Shown piece by piece: positions 3,100-53,090 of a DNA stretch of 64,000 nt (position 1 is its first letter; each line of letters begins with the position of its first letter). The notes below the pieces were generated by a model, which was not told the origin of the DNA, did no database searches, and was given only the letters and a program-made list of their open reading frames with translations. The translations under genes and the position numbers were made by a program. Location of the stretch: sequence record NC_031039.1. One strand, 5' to 3'.

Positions 3100-3259
3100 T
3101 TTTTAGTTATCATTTCTCTTAAAAATATCTAAGATTAAAAATAACTAATCAATATAATAATATATTTTTAAAAAGAGTTTTATTTAAACAATTAAATATA
3201 AAAGTATTTATTTCAAATAAACATTAAATTATATTAATCTGAAAGGAAAGTGATTTTCA

Positions 3260-3559
3260 ATGTCATCATTCTTCAACTTACTCACTGAGTCAAATACTAG
3301 TGATATTATTCTTGAGCAAACTTTTCAAGAAGCTAACGTAGTTCGTATGGATAAACAAACTCTTAAAAAACGTTTGCTTACTCAGGCTACACTATTAGCG
3401 GCTAAAGATGCTAACGATCCAATTTATCAAAAATATGTTAAAGCGGCTAAACAAAAACGCCATTTCCGTTCTCAAATTCAACAAAAATATGGTGCTAAAG
3501 GTCAAGCTAAAGTCCGTGAGTTCCTTAAACAGCAACAACAAGCTAAACAAGCTCGTTAA
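3260..3559 (+). CDS. Late small basic protein, probably virion head-associated
   Basis: Two AACA-N6-TA motifs upstream (3187, 3220); LLTE/ILE propeptide-like N-terminus; basic C-terminus. Confidence 0.5.
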   Translation: MSSFFNLLTESNTSDIILEQTFQEANVVRMDKQTLKKRLLTQATLLAAKDANDPIYQKYVKAAKQKRHFRSQIQQKYGAKGQAKVREFLKQQQQAKQAR

Positions 3560-3638
3560 TTTTCGGATCATAGAAATATGAATGAGAAAGATTACTATTA
3601 ATGTAATCAGATTTGAAAGTGAAGAATAATTTTAAATT

Positions 3639-3670
3639 ATCCTTAAGATCTTATTAAAGATCTTAAGGAT
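3639..3670 (+). terminator. Intrinsic terminator-like hairpin
   Basis: ATCCTTAAGATCTT-atta-AAGATCTTAAGGAT. Confidence 0.65.
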
Positions 3671-3737
3671 ACTTATATACCGTTTACATATAATACTTAG
3701 TTATTTTTAAGATATTAAAAAACATAAAAAGTGATGT

Positions 3738-3750
3738 AAATATATATTAT
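3738..3750 (+). promoter_or_regulatory. Phage early-type promoter AAATATATATTAT (representative copy)
   Basis: Exact 13-mer in intergenic gaps at 3738(+), 15406(+), 16414(+), 28049(-), 40214(+), 57705(+); variants at 9388(+) and 3157(-); core resembles phiKZ early TATATTAC. Confidence 0.75.
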
Positions 3751-3804
3751 TAACTTGTATTTTTCCATGTTTCATGTTATAATTAATCAACGGAGGGATC
3801 ATCA

Positions 3805-5700
3805 TTGGAAAAGACTTATAATTTAAATGATATTCTATTATCAAATGAGTATGAAAAAATTAAAGAGGATATCAAGGAAGAAATAATTAATGATATGGCA
3901 TCTAAGAAAGTAAAGTATAGTAATACTTCTGAATTTGCTAAAAATGACTTTCTTAAAGATGAATTCATTGATTTAGTTGTTGATGGGGAAACATATGAAA
4001 TTACATATGGAAATCTAATCACATTATTAATTGTTGCAAGACCATTTAATCACTTTAAAGTACCAATGACTGAAGATTTATTATTTGATCTATCTGATTT
4101 AAAAGAATACCAAAATTATTATACTACATTGCTGGAACATTTTGGTTACAGTAATGAAATTAAATCCATTATTAAAGATGTTATTAGTGAGTTAGCAATT
4201 TTCTCTGGGGATATTAATGTAACATTTGGTAATACAGTTTCTATTAAATCACTTATTGACTTGGGAAATAAAGTAAAGAGATTTAGAGAATTATTACATT
4301 ATCGTTTACCAAATGATGAAGCATTGGAGTTTAATGATATTGAGGCTATTATTAAAAAGAATTTAGATGAAATTATGAAAATTCTTTCTGAAACTGATAA
4401 TATGCTAAGATATTATATTGATTCAGGTGCTGGTATTAACTCAAAACAATTTGGTCAAGTATTATCATTAGTAGGTTCTAAACCGGATTTATTTGGTAAA
4501 ATTATTCCTTATCCAATTAATACTAGTTTCCTAAGAGGATTAGATGTACGGTCTTTCTATATTAATGCTTTAGGGGCAAGAAAAGCTTTAATCACAAACT
4601 ATCAACAAGTAAGAAACTCTGGCTATCTAACAAGAAAAATTAGTATGTTATTGATGGATACAAAATTAATTGATTTAGATGATTGTGGAAGCCATGAAAA
4701 CAACTATCTTTCAATTAATGTTGAGAATAAAGATGTTCTAAAAAGATTCTCTAAAAGAAGTTATTTAAATAATAATGGTGAATTAGTTGAAATTGATATT
4801 AATGATGAAAGTCTAATTGGACAGGTAATAAAAATTCCTTCTCCAACTACTTGTGCATCTAATGAAGGCGTTTGTCGTAAATGTTATGGTAAATTGTTTG
4901 ATATCAATAAAGATTTAAATATTGGCATGATTGCAGTTCTACTATTAACAGATCCATTAACTCAGCGTTTATTAAGTGCAAAACACTTACTAGAGACTCG
5001 GTCTTCTAAGATCGATTGGGGAACTAATTTTGAAGAGAACTTTATCGTAAACAGAAACTTAATTTATCCTAAAGTTTATAATGGAACGGTTATTATTAAA
5101 GAAGATGATTTTAAAGAAGATGAGGAAACAGAAGAACAAGTATTTGATACATTTACTTTAAAAAGTGGTAATAGATTTATTTCTATTAGTTCACCAATGA
5201 GATTATTCCTAAATAAAGACCTTAAGAAACAACTTGATGAAAGCTTTTATAATATAGAAGAAATGCAATTTGAAATTCCATTAAATAAGCTTGATGAAGG
5301 CGATAGTTTTGCAACATTCATCATGGATAATAACGAATTATCAAAACCATTAAGGGAAATTAAAGATCTTATTGAAACTAATAAATATATTAAAGATCAT
5401 AATGTTAATGAAGTGGTAAACTATTTTATTTACCTCTTAAATGAATCAGGTATCAATATTCAGTCTGTTCATTCAGAGTTAATCATTAGAGAAATGATGA
5501 AACTAGATGATTCAGATAGAACACAATTTAAAAATGATAAAATGCCGGATTATGAAATCTTCCGTATTACAGATGCTAATTTAAAGGGAGATAGTCTATC
5601 AAGATCATTATTATTTGAGCAAGTTAAGAAACAGCTAACTACACTAGATTATGATACATTTAATAAAACAAAATCTTCAATTTTAGATAAACTACTTTAA
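3805..5700 (+). CDS. rpoC: Phage multisubunit RNA polymerase beta' subunit, C-terminal half (probably non-virion RNAP)
   Basis: Bridge helix QQVRNSGYLTRK..DLDDCG, Zn motif PTTC-x6-CRKCYG, trigger loop IGMIAV..TDPLTQRLLSAKH; TTG start after GGAGG; early-type promoter. Confidence 0.9.
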   Translation: MEKTYNLNDILLSNEYEKIKEDIKEEIINDMASKKVKYSNTSEFAKNDFLKDEFIDLVVDGETYEITYGNLITLLIVARPFNHFKVPMTEDLLFDLSDLKEYQNYYTTLLEHFGYSNEIKSIIKDVISELAIFSGDINVTFGNTVSIKSLIDLGNKVKRFRELLHYRLPNDEALEFNDIEAIIKKNLDEIMKILSETDNMLRYYIDSGAGINSKQFGQVLSLVGSKPDLFGKIIPYPINTSFLRGLDVRSFYINALGARKALITNYQQVRNSGYLTRKISMLLMDTKLIDLDDCGSHENNYLSINVENKDVLKRFSKRSYLNNNGELVEIDINDESLIGQVIKIPSPTTCASNEGVCRKCYGKLFDINKDLNIGMIAVLLLTDPLTQRLLSAKHLLETRSSKIDWGTNFEENFIVNRNLIYPKVYNGTVIIKEDDFKEDEETEEQVFDTFTLKSGNRFISISSPMRLFLNKDLKKQLDESFYNIEEMQFEIPLNKLDEGDSFATFIMDNNELSKPLREIKDLIETNKYIKDHNVNEVVNYFIYLLNESGINIQSVHSELIIREMMKLDDSDRTQFKNDKMPDYEIFRITDANLKGDSLSRSLLFEQVKKQLTTLDYDTFNKTKSSILDKLL

Positions 5701-5707
5701 TTAATAA

Positions 5708-5746
5708 AAAACAGTATAAAGGTCTATATGATCTTTATACTGTTTT
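5708..5746 (+). terminator. Intrinsic terminator after RNAP beta' gene
   Basis: AAAACAGTATAAAG...CTTTATACTGTTTT followed by T-rich tract. Confidence 0.7.
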
Positions 5747-5822
5747 ATTTTTACATATTAATGTATAAATAAATAAAAATATAGATAACAAAATATCAGA
5801 AATAAATTTAGGGAGAGATTTT

Positions 5823-6413
5823 ATGTTAGCCTTTCAAGATCAAAAAGAATTCAGAAATCATATTAATGATTTTACAAAAAGACAAGAAGAAATTGATGAA
5901 CTTATGATAGATATTACCGAGTATATAAAAGAATATTTATGTACTAATTATATTATTGGTGAAAAATTAGTTTTAGTACCTGATGAGCGTAAAATTGATA
6001 TTTATTTCTTAGAGGAAGTTGATTCATTACTTATGTGTAGCATTGATATTTTTAGTATGGTTATTACAGGTTATAAAATAGATCCTAGATTATTAAAGAA
6101 ACATAAAAAAATGATTGAAAAACAGTATAAAGATATGCATGACGCTAAAAAAGGACTTACAAAACGTTTATCATTTTTAAAATCTATTAAACTCCCAATT
6201 AAAAAAAGATATGAACAAATAGAAAGAATTGAATATGAAATCATTCAGACAGATATTGTAATTGGCTATATAAACGACTATATTTATTTTACTAATACTA
6301 GAGATGATTTAGTCAATCAAATTTCTTATGATATACAAATCAATTTTAATGAAGAAAATGATAAATATCCATTTTTAAAATTCTCTAGAGAGTATGAATT
6401 TCTTGGTTCTTAA
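5823..6413 (+). CDS. Hypothetical protein
   Basis: 196-aa ORF with GGGAG SD; no motif recognised. Confidence 0.6.
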   Translation: MLAFQDQKEFRNHINDFTKRQEEIDELMIDITEYIKEYLCTNYIIGEKLVLVPDERKIDIYFLEEVDSLLMCSIDIFSMVITGYKIDPRLLKKHKKMIEKQYKDMHDAKKGLTKRLSFLKSIKLPIKKRYEQIERIEYEIIQTDIVIGYINDYIYFTNTRDDLVNQISYDIQINFNEENDKYPFLKFSREYEFLGS

Positions 6414-25145: not shown

Positions 25146-28100
25146 TTATTCTGAATATATTTTACCAATTTCTCGTTTAAGATGTACTAATGCTTTGTTT
25201 AAATATAGAGCATTATAAATATCAACGGTCATGCGTGAAACGATACTTAATGGACTCATAATGGCTTCAATGTTCTCATCTGGATCATTCTCACTAAAAG
25301 GCTCTTGATCTTTAGGAATAACATCAGATACAATTGTCTTAAGTGCTGTATAATACGTAATCTTATCTCCAATACCAAGTTCATCATCATACTCAATATA
25401 AATCTCAATGAGTAGTCCATCTACCTCAGTACCTTTAATTTTCTCACCTGATTGCTTTTGAATAGGTTTAAGATTAACAGAAGTCAGATCATTAGTAACA
25501 GACTTAATCTTATCTTCTTTCTTCTTACTATCTTTAATATAGTTCTTCAGAATCTTTTGTACTGAAGGAGAAAACTCACTGATATCCTTATTGTAATACA
25601 TTACAACATCTACAATCTTACCAGTATATTTAGAACTTACCTTGTTCTTAGATAACTCATTAATAGTCTCATTAAAGTCATCTCCTAGTTTATCTAAGAG
25701 TTGGTTGAGTGATTTATCTTCAAAGGAGTTTTCAAAGATAATCAATGGATCACCAGTCTTAACCATATCGCCTTTCTTAACAATAAAGTCAATGTTTGAG
25801 TTAACTCCAAGAGCAAGTTCTTTCTTCATAGTAATTTTAGTAGATAGGTCTTGAGATAAGCTTTCTGTGATAATACTACTATCTTCATACGTGTAATCTG
25901 CGCTTGCTAGTGCTACTTTACAAAGCTTCCCTGTAGTATACGTGATATCATCTTTCTTATCGCCAAGGAAGTAACTTGGATTCTTCGCTAGGATATCATC
26001 TTTTTTGAATTTCTCTCCTACTTTGATAATGAGTTCTTTACGATTAGCAATGTAAACAATTATCTTCCACCAAATTCGCTAGTTTTGGTGCGCCCTCTAA
26101 CGGACTGCTCCATGTTACCATGAAGTTGAGACTATATCTTCAAAGTTCCCTGTTTCCCAGTATACATAAATAAAAGTATACCAGATTTCATCTCAGAAAC
26201 CTGCCACCAATCGCTTGTGGGGTACTCTACTCATCTTTATTAATAAGATTTTCGATAGTCGTTGAACGTTCTCTATTAGTTTAATAGAGCTTCGCTTCTG
26301 ATTATCCTTTTAATAAGGACTTCCCAGAAATTAAAGGAATTTAACGTGAGCCTTTAAACCCACCATTACTATTCTTACTCATATGCTCGGAGAGATCAAT
26401 GACGTCTTTCTTACCATCATTATAACGAACGACAGCTAGTTCATGTTCTTCATCTATGGACTCTAGAACCCCATCTTTTTTTGCTCTAAACACAAAGTCG
26501 TCACTTAGAATATAAGCAACAGTCTTCTCTACACCACTACCAAATAGAGGTTTAGATTGCTTTGTGGTAGGAATGATCGTTAACTTCCATTAGATTCGCT
26601 ACGTCTAATGCGTTCTCTTATGAACTGCTCTATATTTCTATAGAGACGAGACTATATCACTATCCTTATCTATTAAGGATAACCCCCATTTCCATTTAAG
26701 GGATTCTCACCCACTCCAATCGCTTGAGCCGTACTCCTATTGCGGAATTTCACCGCTACTCACAATCCTAAGATTGCTTTCGGATAGTCGTTGAACCTTA
26801 CTCATAAAGAGTCTTGGATGCTGATTGCCCATATATCCTTTAGATTGTTACACTTTGGTACTAAAGGCTTTAGGATTTTCCAGCAGTTAAAGGGTTTTGC
26901 TAGCAATATTACTACTACTAGGCACGAATCATGCTTTTGCTGCGTTGTTTGCATTCCAACGCGCGGTGGGTCGGCATGACGAGCAGTAAAGGAGTTTAAT
27001 AACTCTGCCGGACCATAGATATTTGTCGTATTATTTTTTGTATTTGGATTGGTGTCTAAGAATCCTCGTGTGTTTTTGAATGCTGGATCAAAAGTTAACT
27101 GTCTAACCCATTACCTTCATATAGGTTCGCTACGCCTATACCGTTCTCTTATGAACTGCTCTATGTTACCATAGAGATGAGACTATATCTTTATCTAGTC
27201 AAAAAAAAAAGAAAGGAGATGACTAGATATCTCCCATTTCCATTTAAGGGATTCTCACCCACTCCAATCGCTTGAGCCGTACTCCTATTGTGTGTTAACC
27301 ACTAAAGGATAGTCGTTGAACGTTACTCTCGTTATAATTAAAAATAATTTATAAAACCGTTTTTCTCAGCAATTTCTTTTCTAAAAGTAATTGCTAGTTC
27401 TTTAGCTTTTTCAAAACCATATTTATTGACTGCAAATGTTTTAATAAATTTTTTATGATTAACACGGATTTCAGATTCCCATCTATTTTTCTTTTTAGAA
27501 TATCTTATTCCTTTAATTCCAGAAGTATTATCGTTTCTTAGTGATGTATTTCTATTATTCATCATTTGAGAAACCTCACGCAAATTACTTTTTCTATTAT
27601 TTAAACTATTTCTATCTATATGATCAATTACATTATTATTATCTTTAATATCCATTAGGTATCTATGAAGCTTTCCACCTGAATTACTTGAAATATAAAA
27701 TGAATTATTTCTTTTAGACCAGATAGCTCTCCAAACATGCTTATTTATTTTATCAATATCTTCAATATCAATTTGAGATTTTACGATACCATATGTTTTT
27801 GAAAAAGTAACTAATAATGCATGATCATCTAATACTTCAATAAAATTATATGCTCTTTTTCCTTCTTTTAATGTTTTCATAGCTATACGCTCACTATAAT
27901 CTCCATATAAAACTTCTGAATAATGTGCAAGGGAATTTGATTTCTTTTCTTTATTATAGAAACTTACTCTCCATAATTTTTGTTCTTTTAGATATATTAT
28001 TTTATTTTTTTCCATAATAGTAGCTCTCCTTTTTAACTTACTACTATTATAATATATATTTAACGAGAGTCTTCGATACGGATTGTCCTATTATTAGGAG

Positions 28101-31100
28101 TTTCCCGTAGTTAGAGAGATTTTATCATTATATATCACTATATAAGGGGGCAGTTTAATTCACCCCAACTTTCATTATCTTCCACTAGATTCGCTACATC
28201 TAATGCGTTCTCTTATGAACTGCTTCATGTTACCATGAAGATGAGACTATATCATCATCCTATTAGGATGCCTCCCATTTCCAACTCCAATCGCTTGAGT
28301 TGTACTCTACTCCCTTCCTTCTAACTAGCGTTATCACAACGATCTGTTAGAGTGGTTTCGATAGTCGTTGAACCTTACTCTAATGAGTCTTGGATGCTGA
28401 TTGTCCTTAAAGGATTTTCCAGCAGTTAAAGAGGTTTACTTATAATATTTCTATTATAAGGGACTATTATAAATCTTGTCTGGGAATTCAAGAATTATAA
28501 TAATTCAATCCGAGTCGGGTGTTGACATTGCCATGATTCCACGCATACTAGGGTCATAAGCACGAATATCAGTTGTGTAAGCATCCGTTTTCTTCATATA
28601 GGTTCGCTACACCTATACCGTTCCTTAGAACTGCTCTAAGTTTCCTTAGAGACGAGACTATATCATCACTTAAAAAGTGCCTCCCATTTCCAGCCTCAAT
28701 CGCTTAGACTGTACTCTACTCCCTTCCACTAACTAGCATTATTGTAATGATCTGTTAGAGTGGTTTCGATAGTCGTTGAACCTTTACCTTATTACAAATA
28801 ATTTGTAACTTAGGTACTTGGTTGCTTATGATTACCCAATCCTTTAAATTTTTACCATACCTGAATTGTTATATTCAGCCATCTATTATGTTTCCATATA
28901 GATTTGGTATTAAAGGCTCTAAGGGTGTTCCAGCAGTTAAAGAGGTTTTAATTGGACTAAACACTTTAATCCAAGTTTCTTCCTGAAAGCCCCTTGTAAG
29001 TAGCCGCACCACCCTTTTCAATTTCCAAAGAAGGGTTAAGGACACTATATTCATCGACAGTAGGTGAATTCATTAATGTCTTTAATAGAATATCCTGTGG
29101 AACAGACATCTTAATAGGATTACCAGCTTTCAGTGTATCCTTATACGTTTTAAATGAATCTGCCAAGATTTTATATAAGTAGGCATTTACTTGCTCAGTA
29201 CCACGAATTCGATATGAACTCATATCATTCAGTGGACTATAGCTCATATCTTCCAATAAGGTATTCGCATACAACAATATGTCATAGATATTCTCAGGTA
29301 ATTCTAACTGTTTCAGTACATCTAATGTGATAGGATCAACCATTAGAGATAGAGTATTATGAAGACCTTTACCCATATTTCTGCTACCGAACATCTCATA
29401 GAAAGTTTCAATATAAGGATCTTTAGAGTTCATTTCTTCAAATGTATACTCTTCAGTAGCCATTGTACTTAGACCACTTAATAATAGGGAATTTCTCAAT
29501 AAAGAATTATTATAATATAGGTATCCATCTTTAAAACGGATCTTGTCATAGTCATCATCAATTGTAATTCTCTTATTCTTAGTATCAAAGCTATATTCAA
29601 TATTATATCTTTCTAATAAATCTTCTAATCCTAATTCATATCCAAGAAGAACCACAAGGGGAATCATTCTATTATTGATACGAACTCGGTTATATGCTAG
29701 AGACTTAGAATTACTTAAAGAAGATAATTTTTTATAAGCTTCCTCACTAAGTGAAGTAACAATAACTTTAATAATGAGTTCTGAAAGACTCATATCAGTA
29801 TTTTCTTGTTTCTTATTATTAATCAGATAAACTCTTTTACTTGAACGCTTAAGAGCAATAACGTTTTCATTATCTTTTGTATGACCGATTGGTAAGAATT
29901 GTTTATCGTCAATATTAATCTTAGCAAGCTTAGCCATATTATCAAGATCACTTTTCAATAAATCTTCTACTTCTTTTTGACTGAACATAAGTTTATATTC
30001 ATCATTCTCTAAGCTTAGAAGGAAGGAAGAGATCTCATTATATTCAAGAGTTGTTTCATATCCCTCATTAATTGTAAGAGCATTACCTAAGCGATAATTA
30101 AACTTCTTACCTGATACCTTAAATTCATTTAAATCCATACCAAAGAGTTTCTTAAGTTTCTCAGTTTTATGAGATAGTTTAGAACCAAAACGCATGACAA
30201 AGAATTTATTATAGTTAGTAGTAATCTGAACTTCATCAGGTTTTGTTTTTACAATTGGTAGAGATAGAATTTGTTTCAAAATCAATTTTTTACCACCATT
30301 AATATTCATAAACCTACCATCTCTGATAATAGGATAATCGAATTTAACAGTATGCTTTACATTACGGTCATCTTGGAAAGTAACAGTATAAGTTAGTTTC
30401 TTTGATAAATCAGTAGATGTGTCTTCTGTTTTAATATCACTTACAAATAATTTAACATCACTATCTCCATTAAATGATGAAAGAACTGCAACTAAGTCTT
30501 TTTTCATCTGTTTCTCAAAGTAGCTCATATCAAAATCTTTAAGATTTGAATATCTAGTTTCTTCTTGAATGACATTTGTATTGGTAATTGGCTTTCGGTC
30601 AATACTTGTTGATTTAAAGTCATCAATAATATCCTGAATATTAATATCATCAAGAGTAACTTGTTTTTGTTTTTCTTTTAAACGTTCAAGAGTCTTTCTC
30701 TGTTTAATTTCATCTCCACCAGTAGACTGAAGCTCTTTAAGAGTTGAAACATCAGCTTTTAATTCCTTACTGTTATTTAAGATATCAATGATTTCATCTT
30801 CACTTTTATCAAGAATATCTTCATCACTTGAATCAATAGCTTTTTCAATATCATCACCAATCTTATCAGTAACTTCAATTGCACTACTAGATAGTTTTGT
30901 ATTTCCATCGATTTGGAAATTACTTAATAATTTTTCTTTAACTTTTTCAGATTTTTCTTTTACTAATGCATCTCTCTTGTTTTCTGTTTCTTGAGTTGCC
31001 TCTTCCTTACCTAGAGGTTTTTCATCATTATTAGTCTTCTGATGATTTGCTGTTTTAATAAGAATATTTAATGCATTAAGGAATCTATTTGCAAGAAGAT

Positions 31101-43310: not shown

Positions 43311-46300
43311 ATGCCAATGAGAGTACTACCAAAATTCGTTAAAAATGTAGGTAGATCACTTGGAAGATCAACAGCTTCAGCATTTGGTGATATGATGCCT
43401 AGTATGAAGAATTCAGGTATTGATAGTAAAAATTATATTGCTGAAGTATATAATTCTTCCAGAGAGAAAGTAACTCCTAATGAAGTTAAACAGACCTACA
43501 TTTATAAATCTGGTCAGCAATTAATTAATAATGCAATTAGAGATCTTAAATCAGGTAATTTCTATAATAAAGAAAGACAACAACAAGCATCTAATGATTC
43601 TTTCAAAGAGATGTTTGGTATTGATTTAGATAATCTTACTAATTTTGAAGATCAAAATAAAGAAACAACAAAAGAGAAAGATGGAAAAACTATTCACAAT
43701 ACCAGTAATAATACTCAACAAAATGTTTTTGTGAATAATAGTGATCCATCTACTTCTAAAAGCATTCAGCAATTAACAACTATTTCATCTTCAGCTATGA
43801 AGATGAGTCATTATAATTCTAGTGCTTTGAGTAAACAAATTTCTACATTAATTGAATTCCAGCATAATAACACTAACAGATTCTATACAGAGATGTCAAG
43901 TAAAATGGCTGATATTACAAGAGATGTTAGTCAGATGACCGGATTCCTTGGTGTGATGGCTGAGGTTTCAGTAGGTGGAACTAGAAGAACACAAGGCGAG
44001 TCCATGCTTGCAACATTATTAGGGTTAGAAGGATTTAGTGTTAGTGGAATGAAGGATATGTATAGGAAAAAATATTCTAATTCTACTGGTGGAATGAAAG
44101 ATACATTTAATCTTGTTATTAAACCTTATATTGATGAAGTTGTTGCAAATCCAATTGGAGCTTTAACTAAAAATGCAATTAAGTTAGCTTTACCAAGAGC
44201 TTTAAAATCAGCTGTTGGTGATATGGATCAAATGTTTAAATTTCTTCCTACTATGATCCAAGGAAAAGCTAAAGATTGGGAAGGTAGCGATAATGTCTTT
44301 AAGAGAAATGCCGCAAAAATATTTGGCATTGATCTAAAAGAAGATAAGGGATTTAACTTTTCTAATTATGAAAAAGGAAAGGTAGCATTTGATGGTGTAA
44401 CTAGACGCTCTATTGTTAATGTAATTCCATCATTGTTATCTAAAATTTTGGCTAGTGTTAGCAATAATTCAACTCATAAAGAAGAACTTATCTATGATTA
44501 TGATAAAGGAAAATTTACTACTAGAAAACGTGTAATAAAAGAAATGAATAGTGATATTAAAAACTTCACTATTGATAACTATGATCTTACTAATTATAAA
44601 GAACAGATTGCAAGAGAGAATCAATCTAAATTTTCAAGCAGTGAAGAATTATCTGCTTTTATGGAAAGAGTTGATAAAGCTCTTTTATCCATGGTTAAAA
44701 ATAGCAAAATGATTCATGGTAATAGCAAGGCATCTGATATTTCGGAGGATGAAGATGTTGCTAATGCTATCTTAAATAACTTCAAGGGTCAAACAAATGC
44801 TAATAAGTCTAAATATCAATATGATCTACTAAGTGCTTCAAAAGCTTATTCCGATATTTATAGAAGAATTGAGCAAAATGAATCATTCAATAATGCCTTT
44901 GATATGACAAAAGAAGAAAGAATATTTGAGCCTGAAACTAATAAAGAAATGGCTAGAAGAGTAAAATCAAATATTGATAGATTCTTTGGTGTTGGTCAAG
45001 GACCAGTAGAAAATAATATGAGTAAAAAGAATCCTCTTTATTGGTTAACTGAAGGTATTAAGAGAGTTAATGGAAAAACTTCTGAATTTTTTTATGGACA
45101 GGATAATAATGAATATGCATATACTAGACCTCAACAACCTTCTTCTAATCAGCAAAATACAGTAAATAGAGGATCTAAGATAAAAGATTTTGCTAGTAGA
45201 GTAGTAAATACAGGAAGTAATGCTATTTCTAGGTTAAATACAAGAAATGGTTTAGTGCCTGAGAGAAGAACTTCACCTTCAATTCCTGTTATCTCAAATA
45301 CTGAGGATACTAGTAGTAACAATACAACAAGAGAATTAAGTAATTTAAATCAAAATATTGAAGAAGTAAATAATGAAATTAGTGGAGATAGAGGTATCAC
45401 CAGAAGCATCTTCCTGTTAAATAGAAATATTGAACGTAATAATAGAATTATGGAAGGTAGAAATGATGAGAAAACATCCTCTTCCACTAATTCAACTGCC
45501 ATTAGAACTACGAATGTACAAAACCCAGATCTTTCCATTCTCCCTAAGATTAATGATAATATTCTTCATATTATAGCATTACTAGAAGCTAAATTTAGTG
45601 GAGATGGCTTACCAGTAGGTAGGATTGGAAAATTCAAAAATATTATTGGTAGTTATAAGGATAAAACTCTTAATTTCTTTGAAAAGTTATTTGGAAGAGG
45701 AAGATCTAATTCAGGAGGTTTCTTCTCTAGAACAGCAGAAAAAGTTAAAGGCTTTATTGGAATGGTATTTGGTAATTCAGGTTCCAGAACTTCACTTTTA
45801 TCTAAATTATTTGGTGGTGCAATGGATTCTATTAAAGGTGCTAATGGAAGACAATCTATTACATCAAGACTTCTAGGAAGAGATGGCATTATCACCAAGT
45901 TTGTTTCTGGTACATTAACAACTGTTTTGGATGTTGCGTCTAAAACAATTCCAAAAGCAACTAAATTTGCAGGAGAGGTAACAAAAGGATTTTTAAATTT
46001 TGGTAAAAGTGCTTTTTCACTAATACTTGGAGCAGGTAAAAAAGGATTAGATAAAGCTAAAGAACTTCGATCAAATAGATCTGCAAGTAGAGCAGGAAGA
46101 AGCGGAAATAGAAATATTAAAGGAATGAGAGGCTTACTTGGTCTTTTAACAAGTACTACTGGGAGTGTTATAGGAGGAGCAGGTAGCCTTATTGGTGGAA
46201 GCTTAAGCCTTGGTATGAGAGGCATTTCAAAAGTAGGAGATATCGCTTCAGGTATTGGTAATAAACTATCTGGTCGTAAAGGGCATAAAAAAAGTAAATC

Positions 46301-49088
46301 TTCTTCTAATAGAAGATCTTTTTCAATGCCAGATATTATAGATAGAGTATTTAATCGTAAAAGTGATTCACTGCATGTCTTTGTAGATGGCGGTTCTCTA
46401 GATAAAATCCGAGAAGTAGTTAAGGTTCAGACACATATTAGTGATGGAAACTCTGCAGTAGAACAAATTGCAGAGTTTAAAAAAAGACGTCAAAATAATG
46501 AAAATAGCCTTCTTCAAAACTTAAAAGGTGGTAGAAAGAAAAGAAATAGAAATAACCTTACAGGTGAACAGTCTTCTGGTGGAGGTTTTTTAAGCGGAAC
46601 ACTGAGTAATATTGCAGGTGATATTATTGGTGAGGTAATTGGAAATAAAATTGCTGGACGTGGAGGAAGAGATACTGGTACTAGAGCTGGAAGAAGAGCT
46701 GGACGGAGAGGAATCTTTGGTAGAATTGGCGGTCTCTTTAATCGCAATAGAGGTGGTGCATCTGAAGCTATTGAAGGAGCAACTGATTTAGCACAAAACT
46801 CTACTAGAATGGGAAGAAATCAATCAACTGGACGAGGAATTAGAGGTATGTTCAGTCGAATTGGTGGAGGATTATCTCGTCTAGGTGGACGAGGAATGGC
46901 AGGAATTGGTGCTTTAGGTGCTGGTGCAGGATTGGCATCTGGGGGTGCTGGAGTTGCTCAAGCCGCAACTACAGGCGCATCAGCTACACAGGCGGCTACT
47001 ACGGCGGCAGGTGCTAGTGGAGTAGCAGGATCGGCTTCTGGAGGCGCTAAAGGACTTCTTAGAGGAGCCGGAACAGCACTTAGAGGGGCAGGTAGATTAG
47101 CAAAATTCATTCCGGGAGTAGGATTAGTTGCTACAGCAGGAATGGGTGTTATGGATGCTATTAATGGCGTTCAGAACGCTAACCAAATATTTGGAACTGA
47201 AAAAGCTACTTTAGGACAAAAAGTATCTGCAGGAGCAGGTAGTGTTATAAGTGGACTTACATTTGGTTTAGCTGATAAAGAAAAAGTTTCAAAAGGGATT
47301 TATGGATTTGGTAACAAGATTAAAGATTTTGGTTCAAAAGCATTAAGTACAGTTAAGAAAAATCCTTTATTACTCGCCGGAGGTATTGGTGGAGGATTAG
47401 GATTAGGTGCTTTAGGACTTTCTAAGATGTTTGGAAAAAAAGAGGATGAAGATCAAAAAAGAGATGCTGAAAAGGGAGAAAACAGTAAGCAACCTATTAA
47501 TAAAATCTCTGCTTGGGTCGAAAAACTAGGTAAATTCTTCTCAATTGGTGCTGGTGGTACATTCTTTAGTGGTATCTGGGGAATGATTACTGGTAAAACA
47601 GGTGGTATCTTTGATAAGATTGGTAACTGGTTTAAAGGCTTATTTGGTGGAGGAAAAGATGATAGTACTTCAGGTGGCGATTCTTATACTGGTAAAATTG
47701 GTTCTGGTATTGGAGCACTAGCCGCTAAATATGAGTCTAGTGGTAATGCTGGAACGGTAGCAAATAGTTCTGGTGATATTGGTGGGCAATCATTTGGTAA
47801 ATATCAACTTGCAAGAAATACTGGGTCTTATAAATCTTTTATTAATAAGCTTAGTGATTATGGTCATGAAGATTGGGAAAAACAATTAAAATCAGCTTAT
47901 AATAGTACCTCTCAAAGTGCGGCAGTGTGGAAGAAGATATATAAGGAAAATCCAAAAGAATTTGAAAAAGTTCAAGATCAATATTTTGCAGATCAATATT
48001 TTAGACCAGCGGCAGGTAAAATCAAATCTGCAATTGGTTTAGATGTTGGTAAACGTTCTACGGCTGTTCAAGCGGTATTATTATCTACTGCTGTTCAACA
48101 TGGAACTGCTGGTGCTGTTAATGTTTGGAAGAATGCACTTGGTAGTAAAGCAAATGATATGTCTGATTCTGAAATTATTAATGCAGTTTATAAAGAGCGT
48201 GCGGCTAATAATGGTATGAAATATTTCCCTAGTTCTTCTGCCGCTATTCGTAAAGGTGTTGTGAACCGATTCTCAAGAGAGAAAAAAGATGCATTAGCAA
48301 TGTTAGCTAAAGATGGTGGAGAAAAAGCAAATACTTCATCTGATAGTGATAAAGATACAAAAGATTCTTCAACAACAGGTTCAACAGCATCTAAGGTTAT
48401 GAATGATCGCAGTCAATTTTACGATAATCCATTTGACTCAGCTTCTTCAGGTGGAGGCTATACAAATAGTACAGCAGGTTATGACTCAGCACCTTCTTCA
48501 TCATATAAGAGTATTGGTGGATTTAGTCTTGGTTCATCTGCTGGAAAAGCATTAACTTCTGGTTCTGCATATGTGGCAAATTTACTTTCAACATCTGATA
48601 AAGCAATGGGAGACTTAAGATGGTCAATTGGAAATAATACTATTTCTAAAGCAAATAGTATTAAGAATAGCTATCTAAATTCCAATTCTTCAAGTAATCC
48701 ATTTTCTGCATTAGGAATTGGCACAGGAACAACATCAAATATTAAATCGACTGCATCAAGTTCATTAGTAAGTCCATTAAGCTCTATTCCAAAACTTTCA
48801 AGTTCTTCTTCAGAAAGTAACACTGGAAGTACTATAACTGGAAATGATTTTACTGAAATGCTTAAGAACTCTGATGAAATTGCTCAAATGCAAAGTATTC
48901 TTAAACAAATTAATGAGAACAGCAAACAAGGAAATAGTATTCTGGCTAAGATGCTTGAAGCCATTATTGATATTAGAGATAATAAAAGTTTTGGTGGAAC
49001 AACAGTAGTCAATAATACTTCTTCAGGTTCAAATTACAGTTCTTCAAGTATTTCTCCAGAGACAGATAGTATGTTAAAGGGTTATTAA
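43311..49088 (+). CDS. Tape-measure protein with VgrG3-like lysozyme domain
   Basis: 1925 aa; helical and G/R/A-rich segments; KYESSG..GD.GG.SFGKYQ..WSTAVQHG-type motif (LSTAVQHG) at about 47716-48305. Confidence 0.75.
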   Translation: MPMRVLPKFVKNVGRSLGRSTASAFGDMMPSMKNSGIDSKNYIAEVYNSSREKVTPNEVKQTYIYKSGQQLINNAIRDLKSGNFYNKERQQQASNDSFKEMFGIDLDNLTNFEDQNKETTKEKDGKTIHNTSNNTQQNVFVNNSDPSTSKSIQQLTTISSSAMKMSHYNSSALSKQISTLIEFQHNNTNRFYTEMSSKMADITRDVSQMTGFLGVMAEVSVGGTRRTQGESMLATLLGLEGFSVSGMKDMYRKKYSNSTGGMKDTFNLVIKPYIDEVVANPIGALTKNAIKLALPRALKSAVGDMDQMFKFLPTMIQGKAKDWEGSDNVFKRNAAKIFGIDLKEDKGFNFSNYEKGKVAFDGVTRRSIVNVIPSLLSKILASVSNNSTHKEELIYDYDKGKFTTRKRVIKEMNSDIKNFTIDNYDLTNYKEQIARENQSKFSSSEELSAFMERVDKALLSMVKNSKMIHGNSKASDISEDEDVANAILNNFKGQTNANKSKYQYDLLSASKAYSDIYRRIEQNESFNNAFDMTKEERIFEPETNKEMARRVKSNIDRFFGVGQGPVENNMSKKNPLYWLTEGIKRVNGKTSEFFYGQDNNEYAYTRPQQPSSNQQNTVNRGSKIKDFASRVVNTGSNAISRLNTRNGLVPERRTSPSIPVISNTEDTSSNNTTRELSNLNQNIEEVNNEISGDRGITRSIFLLNRNIERNNRIMEGRNDEKTSSSTNSTAIRTTNVQNPDLSILPKINDNILHIIALLEAKFSGDGLPVGRIGKFKNIIGSYKDKTLNFFEKLFGRGRSNSGGFFSRTAEKVKGFIGMVFGNSGSRTSLLSKLFGGAMDSIKGANGRQSITSRLLGRDGIITKFVSGTLTTVLDVASKTIPKATKFAGEVTKGFLNFGKSAFSLILGAGKKGLDKAKELRSNRSASRAGRSGNRNIKGMRGLLGLLTSTTGSVIGGAGSLIGGSLSLGMRGISKVGDIASGIGNKLSGRKGHKKSKSSSNRRSFSMPDIIDRVFNRKSDSLHVFVDGGSLDKIREVVKVQTHISDGNSAVEQIAEFKKRRQNNENSLLQNLKGGRKKRNRNNLTGEQSSGGGFLSGTLSNIAGDIIGEVIGNKIAGRGGRDTGTRAGRRAGRRGIFGRIGGLFNRNRGGASEAIEGATDLAQNSTRMGRNQSTGRGIRGMFSRIGGGLSRLGGRGMAGIGALGAGAGLASGGAGVAQAATTGASATQAATTAAGASGVAGSASGGAKGLLRGAGTALRGAGRLAKFIPGVGLVATAGMGVMDAINGVQNANQIFGTEKATLGQKVSAGAGSVISGLTFGLADKEKVSKGIYGFGNKIKDFGSKALSTVKKNPLLLAGGIGGGLGLGALGLSKMFGKKEDEDQKRDAEKGENSKQPINKISAWVEKLGKFFSIGAGGTFFSGIWGMITGKTGGIFDKIGNWFKGLFGGGKDDSTSGGDSYTGKIGSGIGALAAKYESSGNAGTVANSSGDIGGQSFGKYQLARNTGSYKSFINKLSDYGHEDWEKQLKSAYNSTSQSAAVWKKIYKENPKEFEKVQDQYFADQYFRPAAGKIKSAIGLDVGKRSTAVQAVLLSTAVQHGTAGAVNVWKNALGSKANDMSDSEIINAVYKERAANNGMKYFPSSSAAIRKGVVNRFSREKKDALAMLAKDGGEKANTSSDSDKDTKDSSTTGSTASKVMNDRSQFYDNPFDSASSGGGYTNSTAGYDSAPSSSYKSIGGFSLGSSAGKALTSGSAYVANLLSTSDKAMGDLRWSIGNNTISKANSIKNSYLNSNSSSNPFSALGIGTGTTSNIKSTASSSLVSPLSSIPKLSSSSSESNTGSTITGNDFTEMLKNSDEIAQMQSILKQINENSKQGNSILAKMLEAIIDIRDNKSFGGTTVVNNTSSGSNYSSSSISPETDSMLKGY

Positions 49089-49105: not shown

Positions 49106-51441
49106 ATGGCAGATGAACAGCAAAACGTTGATGAACAACAGTCACAGATAATTGGAGATGAGTTTTTCCAAGAAGGTAACTCTAATTCAGATTCAAAAGG
49201 TGGATTTGGAACAAGTGTAGAATATACTGATGGTTTTGAAGCGTTAATTGGATCTTCTAAGGGTGGTTCTGGTTCTTATGCTACACCTACATGGAATCCA
49301 TATAAATCAGATAGTGTATTAGGATTACCTTTATACTATAATGATTTAGCGGATCCTTCGGGAAGAGTATACAATCAAACCATTATTCAAGATATTCCTA
49401 ATATATACATGGTTCCCGGAATTCCATCTATTAATAGAAATATGATTGACGTAGCAGGAAAACGTATTATTCCTGCTACTCTTTCTCGTGCATTAATGGA
49501 TTTTCAAAATAATCCAAATAGTATTTTTAATTTTGGAGTTAGAGGAGTAAAAAGTGGTAATGACCTTCGTTTCATAGGGTTTAAAGCAGATTATTCTGAA
49601 TACTTTAAATATGTACAAACTATGTTAAGTACTATACATTCATATATGGCAATGGATGGCATATTTGATTTATATAGATTCTCAGATGACTTTAATAATA
49701 GTTTTAAAAATTATGGATTATGTTTTTATGCAGATAAATCTACAACTATTTCTGAGTCAGCTGATAATACTTATGCGGCTTCTAGAACAGCAGAAATGGT
49801 AAGTGAGAAAGCGGCTACTTTAAGGGAAGCAGATTTATTATATCCTACAGGAAGTACAACATCTCGTATTGTTGACTCAATTAAAGCGGCTAATCCAATT
49901 GGTGTACTAGAATCATTAGGTTCATTTGATGGAATTATCACTCGTACATCAAATGCATTATTTCGTGTTGTAAATGGATCACAATTAATGTTCCCTGACT
50001 TTTGGCAAGATTCTAGATTTGATAAATCTTATAATATTAGTTTCAAATTTTATAGTCCTTATGGTGATAGAGAAAGTATATTTAGATATGTGTATGTACC
50101 TTTTATAGCACTATTAGCATTAGCATTGCCTTAAATGACGGGGCAATTAAAACTCTTTTAACTGCTGGAACATCCTTAGAGCTTATTAGACTACAACGTG
50201 ACTGGTGACAGTGAGCGTGAATGTTTAAAAACTAATAAGATTGGACAATCAGCAACTAGTTAAAACTTCCACATGGAAGTTACTAGCTCAACGACTATCG
50301 AAACCACATCATTTGATGGAAGGAAGTAGAGTACCCCACAAGCGTGGTTACATTTAGGCATAAATGTAAGTATAGTAAACTAATACTATATGGGAAACAA
50401 AGAGCATGATGAAGGCAAAAAGCTGGAGTGAAGATATAGTCTCAACTTCTATGGAAACATAGAGCAGTTCATAAGAGAACGCACTGAAGTAGCGACTCAG
50501 TGGAAGGTTATGCGTCAAGACGGTTTATTAGGATATCAGCAACCATTCTTTGTAAGAATGTCTCGTCCGGGTTAACTAAATAGCTCGGCTTATGAGTAAT
50601 CATAAGAAACAATCATTCTCTAATTGCTGGAAAGTCTTAACATGTTGTGATGAAGATAATCAGCAGCGAAGATTATTAGTTTTAGATTGTGTAATAAAAA
50701 ATTATATCAATAGTAAAATAAACAAAATAATATAAAAATAATTATTGTAAGATTAATAATATTCCACTTTTAAGAATACCATATAAATATAGGGATACTG
50801 TTGATATAATTCTAGAAGACTTCTTTACTAATAATAACGTTCAACGACTATCCGAAAGTAATCGTTAGATTATGAGTAGCCTAAAAATAGGCAATAGGAG
50901 TACGGCTCAAGTGTTTGGAGTGGGTGAAAATCCCTTAAATGGAAACGGGAATCCCCTCTTTAGAGAGGGTGAAGATATAGTCTCATCTCTATGGAAACAT
51001 AGAGCAGTTCATAAGAGAACGCATTAGATGTAGCGAATCTAATGGAAGGTAATGTATTTTGACATAGATATGGGAGTAGTAACAAGCTTAACTATCACTA
51101 AAGGCGGAGCTGATAGTCTTTGGACAGTTGACGGTCATCCGCAAATGATTGAAGTTAATATGAACGTAGTAGATTTATATCCACAAATGATCCAAATTAA
51201 AGATATTGGTTTACTTGCATATAATCTGGGAATTGCATCATTCTTAGAAAACATGGCAGGAATAAGACCAGACCAATTAAGTTTTCTTAAATTTAAATCA
51301 TTAATTAATAGAAAACTATCAAATTCATTATTGTTTACTACTTTCCTTGATGGAGGTTCAGGAATTAAAGATAGAGTTGGTAATAAATTTGCTGACTTCT
51401 TCTATGAACTACAAGGTAAGTTTAATAATATATTAAGATAA
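49106..51441 (+). CDS. Tail tube initiator/baseplate protein; three exons, about 490 aa after splicing
   Basis: Exons 49106-50131, 50513-50572, 51055-51441 join as LALALP|RQDGLLGYQQPFFVRMSRPG|YFDIDMGVVTSLTITKGG; follows the tape-measure gene. Confidence 0.75.
50132..50512 (+). mobile_element. Group I intron A (381 nt)
   Basis: P1 UUGCCU|/GGGCAA; perfect P10 UGACG/CGUCA; P7 GACUAUC/GAUAUAGUC; terminal G. Confidence 0.9.
50573..51054 (+). mobile_element. Group I intron B (482 nt) with AT-rich P6 extension
   Basis: P1 CCGGGU|/GCUCGG; P10 AAAUA/UAUUU; P7 elements; terminal G. Confidence 0.9.
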
Positions 51442-51558: not shown

Positions 51559-52158
51559 TTGGCATTTAAAAAAGGTAGTATTTCACAAACTACCAAATCG
51601 CAAAAAAAGAAATTAGAAAAAATTAAAAATACTGAAATTGAGTTAATAATTAATGAATTAGATGATAATCAAGTAGTTGTTAATATTAACATGAATAGCA
51701 TAATAGAACCATATGTAAGAAATAGATTGGCAGGTAATTCATCACATCTATATGATCCATTAAATACTTATAAGAAACAGATAAGACGAAAATTAAAAGA
51801 ACAACTAGAAAATTATGAAAACTTTAAAATGGGAGAAGGTAAAATTACTTTCATTATAGATGTATATACTGTTCCACCTAAGTCATTTACAAAAAGACAG
51901 TTAGTATATGCTATATTTAAGAGAATTATAAGACCTATTGTTAAACCAGACTTAGATAATGTTGCTAAAACTGCAATGGATGTTTGTTCTAAATTATTTT
52001 GGAAAGATGATAATCAAGTAGTAGAACTTAAAGTGAGAAAATTTTATGGGGAAAACCAAGCAACTTATATTAAATTTTACATGGATTTAAAGCCAGATGA
52101 AATTCGGGGAAGAGCAAATGAGGAGGAAAATGAACTATGGAAAACGCTAAATCTTTAG
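51559..52158 (+). CDS. rusA: RusA-family Holliday junction resolvase
   Basis: KPDLDNVAK..MD...WKDDNQV; TTG start at 51559 after GGAGG. Confidence 0.85.
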   Translation: MAFKKGSISQTTKSQKKKLEKIKNTEIELIINELDDNQVVVNINMNSIIEPYVRNRLAGNSSHLYDPLNTYKKQIRRKLKEQLENYENFKMGEGKITFIIDVYTVPPKSFTKRQLVYAIFKRIIRPIVKPDLDNVAKTAMDVCSKLFWKDDNQVVELKVRKFYGENQATYIKFYMDLKPDEIRGRANEEENELWKTLNL

Positions 52159-53090
52159 CGGATACATCAAAGTATCTCAACCAAAGTGACATTGAAAATA
52201 TTGTGAAAGTAAATAAAATTAAAAAGGATATTACTAGTTTTTTTGATATGGATTTATTCATCAATAAGATGAGAGATATTATTGATGAATCTGAACATTT
52301 TGACTTTAGAAGTAAAACTTCACGATTATATATTGAAAAAGAAAGACCAAATTTTATTTTAAAATATGTATCAGATGAACTAACAAATAAAATTAATTCT
52401 GTACAAGGTTCTGATCCAGAAGAAACTGAGTCAATTCAAATTGATATTATTACTGAATACATCTTTAATGATGTTATCTCTAAATTTTCTACTTTTGTTA
52501 CTGATTGTATTAAAGACACAGAAAAATTAAATGATTTATTTTCAGATATTCCAGATGATATCAAAGATATTCTAATTTCAAATATTTATACAATTAGACC
52601 TGATATCAAGGGAAATAACATTCAAGTACTTTATTTTATTTAATAAAAAAGATTACAGGGGGTTTTCATAATGTGGAAACAAGCATTAAAATTAAAAGGT
52701 ACAAAAGATTTAATTGATGAAGAAATTATTAACTTAGATGATGTAATTCTAACAAAACCTGTTTACAATAAAGTAAAGAATACTATTGAAAAAGCAATTG
52801 CACGCAATGAATTAGTTACTACTAATTTAAAAGGAGTAGGAAAGACAACTGCTGTTATTAAATTAGCTAAGAAGTATGATCTGAGTGTAGTTACTCTTCA
52901 TTCTGAAGTGGAAGAATTATCAGAAAAGTTTAATTATGGTAGAATTTATTCTTTACAGATGATAACTGGAAATTTAGATGATTATAAAAACCATAAATTT
53001 ATTGTAGACTGCGGAAGAAATACTGAGGGAGTAATTAATGCATTAAGAAATAATGGTCTTAATGTAATTTCAGGTGTTATATGTAATTAA
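52137..53090 (+). CDS. Hypothetical protein (52137-52643) and small P-loop-like protein (52671-53090)
   Basis: KGVGKTT in the second ORF; first start uncertain. Confidence 0.5.

What the first reader, a model, noticed from the sequence alone, without database searches (positions are those of the whole stretch)
50132..51054. Two group I introns flanking a 60-nt exon in a tail/baseplate structural gene
Seen: ORFs 49106-50134 and 51052-51441 are exons 1 and 3; a hidden 20-codon exon (50513-50572) joins them in frame, with perfect P10 pairings. The track's start ATG at 51052 is the intron's terminal AUG. Established: phage group I introns are mostly in DNA/nucleotide metabolism genes; structural-gene cases such as Twort orf142 are rare. 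Inference: tail assembly depends on ribozyme splicing.
Basis: partly seen in the sequence, partly recalled or inferred. Interest (0 to 1): 0.75.

Follow-up and report, generated by a model that had tools for sequence, protein, structure and literature searches.

The report
Two known introns in AR9 baseplate gene

Summary
Confirmed, and already known. The window is Bacillus jumbo phage AR9, genome bases 124001-188000. The gene is AR9_g205 (RefSeq BI022_gp204), a "virion protein". GenBank already annotates it as a three-piece join.

Both interruptions match the Rfam group I intron model (56.1 and 47.7 bits). Each has a U·G splice-site pair in a 6-bp P1, an abutting 5-bp P10, a P7 helix and a terminal G.

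Phage Goe21 lacks intron 2 to the base, and a Logan contig lacks both introns to the base. About 30 uninterrupted homologues (445-522 aa) align across both junctions without a gap. Distant relatives carry an intron at the first site, one of them with a compensatory P1 change.

The protein is a homologue of phiKZ gp182 and Goslar gp203. These form the hexameric ring between the tail-tube initiator and the baseplate hub, the same layer as T4 gp48/gp54. The gene is transcribed late.

In relatives both introns carry homing-endonuclease genes. AR9 has lost one entirely and keeps a deleted remnant of the other.

The only new points are corrections to the PBS1, Goe21 and Internexus annotations and the functional assignment.

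The parts
48936..48936 (+). Published late transcription start site for this gene (AR9 genome position 172936, 170 nt before the start codon). It lies inside the 3' end of the tape-measure gene.
   Evidence: Table S3 of PMC5312081. The 22 nt ending at the TSS map uniquely to 48915-48936.
49106..50131 (+). Exon 1, 342 codons, of AR9_g205 / BI022_gp204 (virion protein, baseplate spacer-ring homologue). Its last base is the U of the splice-site U·G pair.
   Evidence: PHROG 20401 profile positions 1-340.
50132..50512 (+). Intron 1, group I, 381 nt, no ORF. It begins with an in-frame TAA and ends with G.
   Evidence: RF00028 at 56.1 bits, above the gathering score. Absent to the base in L004. Orthologous introns at the same site in L006, L007 and L009.
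50136..50146 (+). Internal guide sequence of intron 1. 50136-50140 pairs with the first 5 nt of exon 2 (P10). 50141-50146 pairs with the last 6 nt of exon 1 (P1).
   Evidence: Read. P1 compensatory change in L009.
50293..50297 (+). Intron 1 P7 5' strand (GACUA). It pairs with UAGUC at 50437-50441.
   Evidence: alignment to the RF00028 core.
50513..50572 (+). Exon 2, 60 nt, 20 codons (residues 343-362).
   Evidence: Maps contiguously between exon 1 and exon 3 in about 30 uninterrupted homologues. Five of its 20 residues are invariant across 30 homologues, counting its last two, P361 and G362.
50573..51054 (+). Intron 2, group I, 482 nt. It begins with an in-frame TAA and ends with AUG, which ORF finders take as a start codon.
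   Evidence: RF00028 at 47.7 bits, E 1.1e-10, just under the gathering score of 50. Absent to the base in Goe21 and L004.
50578..50588 (+). Internal guide sequence of intron 2. 50578-50582 pairs with the first 5 nt of exon 3 (P10). 50583-50588 pairs with the last 6 nt of exon 2 (P1).
   Evidence: Read.
50592..50868 (+). Remnant of the intron-2 homing-endonuclease gene, broken by one internal deletion of about 0.6 kb relative to the intact 301-codon ORF of phage Internexus. The annotated 47-codon ORF AR9_g206 is its start.
50846..50850 (+). Intron 2 P7 5' strand (GACUA). It pairs with UAGUC at 50978-50982.
51055..51441 (+). Exon 3, 128 codons plus stop.
   Evidence: PHROG 20401 profile positions 361-472.

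Best explanation
The region is the late gene AR9_g205 (RefSeq BI022_gp204) of Bacillus phage AR9. It encodes a 490-aa virion protein homologous to phiKZ gp182 and Goslar gp203. Those proteins form the hexameric ring between the tail-tube initiator ring and the trimeric baseplate hub.

Two subgroup-IA-like group I introns of 381 and 482 nt interrupt the gene. They sit 60 nt apart in the most conserved part of the protein, the predicted barrel-forming beta-sheet domain.

Inferred mechanism: in the late transcript each ribozyme folds. Its guide sequence pairs with the last 6 nt of the upstream exon (P1, U·G at the splice site) and the first 5 nt of the downstream exon (P10). Guanosine-initiated transesterification then removes the intron and joins the three exons into one reading frame. 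Unspliced RNA would be translated only to residue 342, because each intron opens with TAA.

The introns are mobile elements at different stages of decay:
- Intron 1: endonuclease gene intact in Goe21 and Internexus, absent from AR9 and PBS1, and the whole intron absent from one close relative.
- Intron 2: endonuclease gene intact in Internexus, deleted remnant in AR9, and the whole intron absent from Goe21 and the same relative.

Shown here: gene structure, exact junctions, ribozyme core elements, homology of the product, and distribution among relatives. From the literature: late transcription and virion association. Inferred: the self-splicing chemistry itself, and that tail assembly needs it.
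For: - Identity: 100% match to AR9.
- Prior annotation: a three-piece join in KU878088 and NC_031039. The deposited protein P0040 (AMS01289.1 / YP_009283109.1, 490 aa) is identical to my join of the exons.
- Ribozymes: RF00028 matches for both introns. P1, P10, P7 and the terminal G can be read.
- Intron-less alleles: Goe21 lacks intron 2 exactly. Logan contig L004 lacks both exactly.
- Uninterrupted homologues: exon peptides map end to end on about 30 proteins, for example P0002 at 3-340, 341-360 and 361-489. The PHROG 20401 profile leaves exactly 20 positions between exon 1 and exon 3.
- Shared site: the 342/343 site is occupied by an intron in relatives with 54-71% protein identity. P1 covaries, UUGCCU/GGGCAA against UUACCU/GGGUAA. 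Thirteen compensatory pairs are predicted between AR9 and L009.
- Homing signature: synonymous differences cluster at the empty sites, 9 of 18 within a 120-nt zone.
- Endonucleases: intron ORFs of relatives hit homing or HNH endonuclease PHROGs at E down to 2e-89.
- Product: profile hits to phiKZ gp182 (1.8e-22) and Goslar gp203 (6.7e-21), fold hits, and their described roles in PMC13250141 and bioRxiv 10.64898/2026.04.21.720040.
- Expression: late promoter, and FPKM of 1.6, 237 and 1425 at 5, 20 and 40 min.
Against: - No RNA or protein data for this particular gene could be examined here. The AR9 genome paper (Lavysh et al. 2016, Virology 495:185) is not held, so I could not check whether g205 was among the genes whose splicing was tested.
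- Intron 2 scores 2.3 bits under Rfam's gathering score.
- The structure model is of modest quality (mean pLDDT 56.5, core 75-86). Placing exon 2 on one barrel strand is therefore an inference.
- The sample type of the Logan contig is unknown.
Confidence: 0.95

Rival explanations
1. There is no splicing. The region encodes two separate virion proteins of 342 and 129 aa with non-coding or junk spacers between them, as the PBS1, Goe21 and Internexus records annotate it.
For: The PBS1 RefSeq record lists gp096 and gp098 as separate 'virion structural proteins'. Goe21 and Internexus list separate hypothetical proteins.
Against: - The 129-aa ORF starts at the intron's terminal AUG, with no upstream signal of its own.
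- The 20 codons between are conserved in frame in about 30 single-ORF homologues.
- Both spacers match the group I model.
- Intron-less alleles fuse the pieces exactly.
- The AR9 authors annotated a join.
Confidence: 0.02
2. The main product skips exon 2. Splicing runs from the 5' site of intron 1 to the 3' site of intron 2 and gives an in-frame 470-aa protein, or the two forms coexist as isoforms.
For: Exon 1 joined to exon 3 would also be in frame (342 + 128 codons). The two introns share an almost identical 3' domain (87 nt at 90% identity), so the 3' splice-site contexts are alike.
Against: - Intron 1's P10 guide (UGACG) matches the start of exon 2, not that of exon 3.
- Exon 2 holds five invariant residues (Q344, Y350, P353, F354 and the exon's last two, P361 and G362) and is present in every uninterrupted homologue.
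- Intron-less alleles keep exon 2.
Confidence: 0.03
3. The introns are removed but are no longer autonomous ribozymes. They depend on a phage or host protein to fold.
For: Intron 2 falls just below the Rfam gathering score and carries AT-rich debris of a deleted endonuclease gene in a peripheral loop. Both AR9 introns lack an intact ORF that could act as a maturase.
Against: - All core elements are intact (P1, P3-P8 alignment, P7, J8/7 motif, terminal G).
- Relatives show compensatory changes that keep helices.
- From my own memory, the abstract of the AR9 genome paper calls the AR9 intervening sequences self-splicing. I could not check this here.
Confidence: 0.08

Closest known systems
AR9_g205 / BI022_gp204 as deposited (KU878088.1, NC_031039.1; Lavysh et al. 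2016)
   Same: It is the same object: the same three exons and the same 490-aa product.
   Different: Nothing differs in the gene model. The record calls the product only 'virion protein' and gives the two small ORFs inside intron 2 (g206, g207) as hypothetical proteins. Here g206 is shown to be the start of a deleted homing-endonuclease gene, and the product is assigned to the phiKZ gp182 family.
Staphylococcus phage Twort orf142, with three group I introns in one late gene (Landthaler and Shub 1999; cited from my own knowledge)
   Same: Several group I introns packed into one late, non-DNA-metabolism phage gene with short exons.
   Different: A different phage, a different gene, and two introns rather than three. 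No sequence comparison was made here.
The five group I introns in the AR9 virion RNA polymerase beta-subunit gene (window 26108-29011, minus strand)
   Same: Same genome and same intron family. All seven introns share the roughly 85-nt 3' domain at 77-90% identity. The last 220 nt of intron 2 are 84% identical to the intron at about 26580-26800.
   Different: Those introns sit in a transcription gene and one holds an intact HNH endonuclease gene. The pair studied here sits in a structural gene and has no intact endonuclease gene.
phiKZ gp182 (baseplate 'spacer' ring, PDB 9xqs), Goslar gp203 (tail tube initiator complex, PDB 11lx) and the T4 gp48/gp54 layer
   Same: Profile-level homology over residues 210-415 (E 1.8e-22 and 6.7e-21), and 9xqs is the best fold hit. 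In AR9 the gene lies directly after the tape-measure gene. In phiKZ the described role is a hexameric 24-stranded barrel that links the tube initiator to the hub.
   Different: The AR9 protein is shorter (490 aa against 664 and 713 aa). Only the C-terminal half is alignable. Likeness to T4 gp48/gp54 is by fold and position only (rank 10).
T4 td / nrdB / sunY and SPO1 DNA polymerase introns, the classic phage group I introns with homing endonucleases (from my own knowledge)
   Same: Group I ribozyme with an endonuclease ORF in a peripheral loop, insertion into highly conserved coding sequence, and presence/absence polymorphism among close relatives.
   Different: Those interrupt nucleotide- or DNA-metabolism genes. 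These interrupt a baseplate gene.

Membership tests
Group I intron (RF00028) | Match to the family covariance model | tested here: met
   Intron 1: 56.1 bits against a gathering score of 50. Intron 2: 47.7 bits, E 1.1e-10, just below the gathering score. For intron 2 the score alone would be borderline; the other rows settle it.
Group I intron (RF00028) | 5' splice site after a U that forms a U·G pair in P1 with an internal guide sequence | tested here: met
   U50131·G50141 and U50572·G50583, each in a 6-bp P1. P1 covaries in L009.
Group I intron (RF00028) | Terminal G, and P10 pairing of the guide with the 3' exon | tested here: met
   G50512 and G51054. Each intron has a perfect 5-bp P10 abutting P1.
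Group I intron (RF00028) | Conserved catalytic core (P3-P8, P7 guanosine-binding helix, J8/7) | tested here: met
   Full-length model alignments covering positions 1-253. P7 GACUA/UAGUC is present in both introns.
Group I intron (RF00028) | Removal restores an uninterrupted conserved reading frame | tested here: met
   The joined exons equal the deposited 490-aa protein. Intron-less alleles exist, and about 30 homologues are contiguous across both junctions.
Group I intron (RF00028) | Guanosine-dependent self-splicing of the RNA | not testable with these tools
   Only indirect evidence: a later paper speaks of experimentally determined mature mRNA sequences in AR9. The AR9 genome paper is not held.
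Mobile (homing) group I intron | Homing-endonuclease ORF in a peripheral loop, with presence/absence polymorphism among close relatives | tested here: met
   ORFs of 314, 341 and 301 codons in Goe21 and Internexus hit phrog_559, phrog_9084 and phrog_7140. AR9 itself has none in intron 1 and a deleted remnant in intron 2. The AR9 copies are therefore probably no longer mobile on their own.
phiKZ gp182 / Goslar gp203 baseplate ring protein | Sequence homology to solved members | tested here: met
   Profile of 30 homologues against PDB sequences: 9xqs_K at 1.8e-22 and 11lx_H at 6.7e-21, over profile positions 210-415.
phiKZ gp182 / Goslar gp203 baseplate ring protein | Same fold (beta-sheet domain that forms a hexameric barrel) | tested here: inconclusive
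   9xqs K and L are the top Foldseek hits (E 2e-9), but TM is only about 0.2 because the model is poor outside the core. Four predicted strands per monomer would fit the 24-stranded hexamer described.
phiKZ gp182 / Goslar gp203 baseplate ring protein | Present in the virion, at the centre of the baseplate | not testable with these tools
   The authors label it 'virion protein' (Table S4). Its location in the AR9 baseplate has not been seen.

The most novel reading that the evidence does not exclude
The two ribozymes 60 nt apart are more than tolerated parasites. One possibility is that splicing efficiency, or an exon-2-skipped isoform, tunes how much functional spacer-ring protein is made late in infection. 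Another is that the excised introns persist as abundant RNAs with a role of their own. The only hint is that published FPKM values for the small features inside intron 2 exceed that of the gene itself at 40 min (3410 and 5481 against 1425). This may equally be an artefact of normalising very short features.
Probability: 0.04. Interest if true: 0.55.

Novelty: already known. Interest (0 to 1): 0.15.

Why it matters
As a discovery it adds little, because the gene model has been public since 2016. Three things are still useful.

1. It shows that the sequence-only reader recovered a 20-codon micro-exon and both splice sites to the base.
2. It gives grounds for correcting the PBS1, Goe21 and Internexus records, which list the exons as separate genes and miss the micro-exon.
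3. It links the AR9 "virion protein" to the recently solved phiKZ and Goslar baseplate ring protein. It also documents, within one gene of one phage genus, intron states from empty site through endonuclease-bearing intron to endonuclease-less intron.

Tried and rejected
- **AR9 genome paper.** Reading it by the PMC id given in two reference lists failed because it is not held. The statement that AR9 introns were shown to self-splice therefore rests on my memory of its abstract and on an indirect remark.
- **Pfam.** It gave nothing for the protein or its pieces, and only sub-threshold hits for the intron ORFs of relatives. PHROGs and the PDB sequence search were informative instead.
- **Rfam on relatives.** With an E-value cut-off it did not find the ORF-bearing introns of Goe21, Internexus or L006, presumably because of the roughly 0.9-kb inserts. 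I placed them by DNA alignment to AR9 instead.
- **Terminator scan.** It found no terminator after the gene.
- **Logan contig L004 as spliced cDNA of AR9.** Rejected as the likelier reading. It is only about 99% identical, and the base before each junction is C or A rather than the U that the intron-bearing alleles need. It is more probably DNA of an intron-less relative. Its last 75 nt are unrelated sequence.

Full report
**1. What the window is**

Megablast of 49106-51441 gives a 100% full-length match to Bacillus phage AR9 (KU878088.1 / NC_031039.1) at 173106-175441. The window is therefore AR9 124001-188000. Close matches of 98-99.5% are PBS1, vB_BspM_Internexus and vB_BsuM-Goe21, all in genus Takahashivirus.

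**2. The observation**

- Exon 1 ends at U50131 and is followed by TAA. Exon 2 (50513-50572) also ends in U and is followed by TAA. Exon 3 starts at 51055, right after an AUG that ORF finders take as a start codon.
- Rfam's group I model matches 50111-50464 at 56.1 bits and 50563-51004 at 47.7 bits, E 1.1e-10.
- In both introns the model stops about 50 nt before the true 3' end. The stretch beyond it is a shared extension that all seven introns of the window possess.
- From the sequence itself, each intron has a 6-bp P1 with a U·G pair at the splice site, a perfect 5-bp P10 abutting it, a P7 helix GACUA/UAGUC, and a terminal G.

**3. Test of the splice model**

I joined the three predicted exons as they stand; the brief allows this for a splice model. 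The result is 490 codons plus a stop, identical to protein P0040 (AMS01289.1 / YP_009283109.1, "virion protein [Bacillus phage AR9]").

The three exon peptides, searched separately, map end to end on about 30 uninterrupted homologues of 445-522 aa. An example is Bacillus phage BpSp protein P0002 at 3-340, 341-360 and 361-489. PHROG 20401 aligns exon 1 to profile positions 1-340 and exon 3 to 361-472, which leaves exactly 20 positions between them.

Nature supplies the intron-less alleles:
- Goe21 has exon 2 fused directly to exon 3.
- Logan contig L004 (SRR29716578, about 99% identical) has all three exons fused.
- In these alleles the base before the empty site is C or A instead of the U of the intron-bearing alleles.
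- Synonymous differences pile up around the sites. In L004, 9 of 18 lie in a 120-nt zone against 9 in the other 1240 nt. This is the usual mark of homing sites and co-conversion.

**4. The same site in distant relatives**

Five homologues are only 334-352 aa long and end at the exon 1 boundary; I fetched the contigs of three of them. In all three an intervening sequence starts exactly after the codon for residue 342:
- L007 gives an RF00028 match of 47 bits.
- L009 has a 406-nt intron (32.5 bits, E 1.5e-6) followed by a fused exon 2+3.
- L006 has an ORF inside.

L009 changes the exon side of P1 from G to A and the guide side from C to U. An RNAalifold comparison of AR9 and L009 keeps 13 pairs through changes on both sides. 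With only two sequences this is supporting evidence, not a proof.

**5. Mobile-element state**

- In Internexus both introns carry ORFs of 341 and 301 codons. In Goe21 intron 1 carries one of 314 codons.
- All three hit homing or HNH endonuclease PHROGs, with phrog_559 at E 2e-89 to 9e-56.
- AR9 intron 1 has no such ORF.
- AR9 intron 2 keeps a remnant (50592-50868) broken by one internal deletion of about 0.6 kb. The annotated 47-codon ORF g206 is its beginning.
- The count for AR9 is therefore one broken gene, broken once, by deletion.

**6. The protein**

- Pfam finds nothing.
- A profile of 30 homologues hits three solved chains over positions 210-415, a stretch that spans both intron sites. 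They are phiKZ gp182 (9xqs, E 1.8e-22), Goslar "tail tube initiator complex protein gp203" (11lx, 6.7e-21) and a chain labelled "capsid decorator gp77" (36za, 5.9e-21).
- The AlphaFold model is mediocre overall (mean pLDDT 56.5) but reaches 75-86 in residues 300-410.
- Its best fold matches are the 9xqs chains. Next come entries for baseplates of contractile injection systems, P1, cyanophage A-1(L) "baseplate-initiators", the T4 baseplate-tail tube complex and pyocin R2.
- In phiKZ, gp182 is the "spacer", a hexamer whose beta-sheet domains form a 24-stranded barrel. The tube-initiator ring docks on it, and it connects to the gp27-like hub (PMC13250141).
- In Goslar, gp203 is one layer of a two-layer initiator complex likened to T4 gp48/gp54.
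- In AR9 the gene follows the tape-measure gene directly.
- The model predicts four long strands: one in exon 1 (304-316), one in exon 2 (355-360) and two in exon 3 (364-378, 393-402). Four strands times six monomers would give 24.
- Invariant residues cluster here: P342, Q344, Y350, P353, F354, P361, G362 and F364.
- The introns therefore sit in the most constrained part of the protein, as mobile introns usually do.

**7. Expression**

The transcription study of AR9 lists a late promoter with its start site at genome position 172936, which is window 48936 (confirmed), 170 nt before the start codon. FPKM values for g205 are 1.6, 237 and 1425 at 5, 20 and 40 min (PMC5312081 Tables S3 and S4). 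The gene is late, as expected for a baseplate part.

**8. How it most likely works**

The late transcript carries both ribozymes, and each removes itself by the standard two-step guanosine-initiated reaction guided by its P1 and P10. Only the doubly spliced mRNA encodes the full barrel domain. Unspliced RNA terminates translation at residue 342. The chemistry is inferred from family membership and was not shown here.

**9. Novelty**

The authors' own GenBank entry annotates AR9_g205 as a three-piece join, as does RefSeq. A later paper refers to experimentally determined mature mRNAs in AR9. From memory, the abstract of the AR9 genome paper states that the intervening sequences are self-splicing group I and group II introns. 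I could not open it. The finding is a correct rediscovery.

Small additions:
- The PBS1, Goe21 and Internexus records split the gene into separate ORFs.
- g206 is a remnant of an endonuclease gene.
- The product belongs to the phiKZ gp182 family.

**10. Declared slip**

One search printed alignment-segment bounds that bracket the deletion in the intron-2 endonuclease remnant. See the section Tried and rejected.

Noticed in passing
window 26108-29011, minus strand: Five more group I introns (RF00028, 50.8-102.4 bits) lie within 3 kb. They are in the gene for the N-terminal part of the virion RNA polymerase beta subunit, which RefSeq annotates as a six-piece join. One intron holds an HNH homing-endonuclease gene.
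   Followed up: partly
window 50428-50512, 50835-51054 and the minus-strand introns at about 26059-28670: All seven introns of the window share the last 85 nt or so (P7 3' strand to the terminal G) at 77-90% identity. The last 220 nt of intron 2 are 84% identical to the RNA polymerase gene intron at about 26580-26800. The AR9 introns thus look like one family that has spread within the genome.
   Followed up: partly
window 50464 vs 50512 and 51004 vs 51054: The Rfam model ends about 50 nt before the real 3' splice site in these introns, because of an extra hairpin after P9. Rfam coordinates alone would therefore misplace the 3' boundary.
   Followed up: yes
L012 (PBS1 NC_043027) 301-2696; L002 (Goe21) 2001-4794; L003 (Internexus) 2001-5902: These records annotate the exons as separate genes and miss the 20-codon exon. 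In Goe21 the annotated last ORF starts at the terminal AUG of intron 1.
   Followed up: yes
window 50429-50480: About 50 nt of the intron 1 core are 94-98% identical to sequences in Enterococcus and Staphylococcus phages, and 35-39-nt parts of it are 95-100% identical to a Pseudaeromonas and a Vibrio phage; a separate 50-60-nt stretch of intron 2 (about 50892-50951) is 88-89% identical to several Vibrio cholerae phages. These are presumably related introns there.
   Followed up: no
window 50592-50735 and 50872-51027 (AR9_g206, g207): Published FPKM values at 40 min for these two small features inside intron 2 (3410 and 5481) exceed that of the host gene (1425). This could mean excised intron RNA accumulates, or it could be a normalisation artefact of short features.
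   Followed up: no
PDB 36za chain rp: A 648-aa homologue of this baseplate protein family is labelled 'Capsid decorator gp77' in one deposited structure. This is at odds with the baseplate location of the phiKZ and Goslar homologues.
   Followed up: no
L009 6506-6892; window 52137-52643: In a distant relative the gene after RusA carries an Acb2/Tad1 hairpin Pfam hit, an anti-defence family. The AR9 gene in the same position (168 aa) has no Pfam hit.
   Followed up: partly
L004 2335-2409: The last 75 nt of the intron-less Logan contig are unrelated to AR9, which suggests a chimeric end or adapter. The called 453-aa protein P0001 is therefore artificially truncated.
   Followed up: partly
window 43311-49088: The 1925-aa tape-measure protein lies directly upstream. 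Its homologues in relatives carry lysozyme, NlpC/P60 or VgrG3-like C-terminal Pfam domains. The late start site of the studied gene lies inside its 3' end.
   Followed up: no
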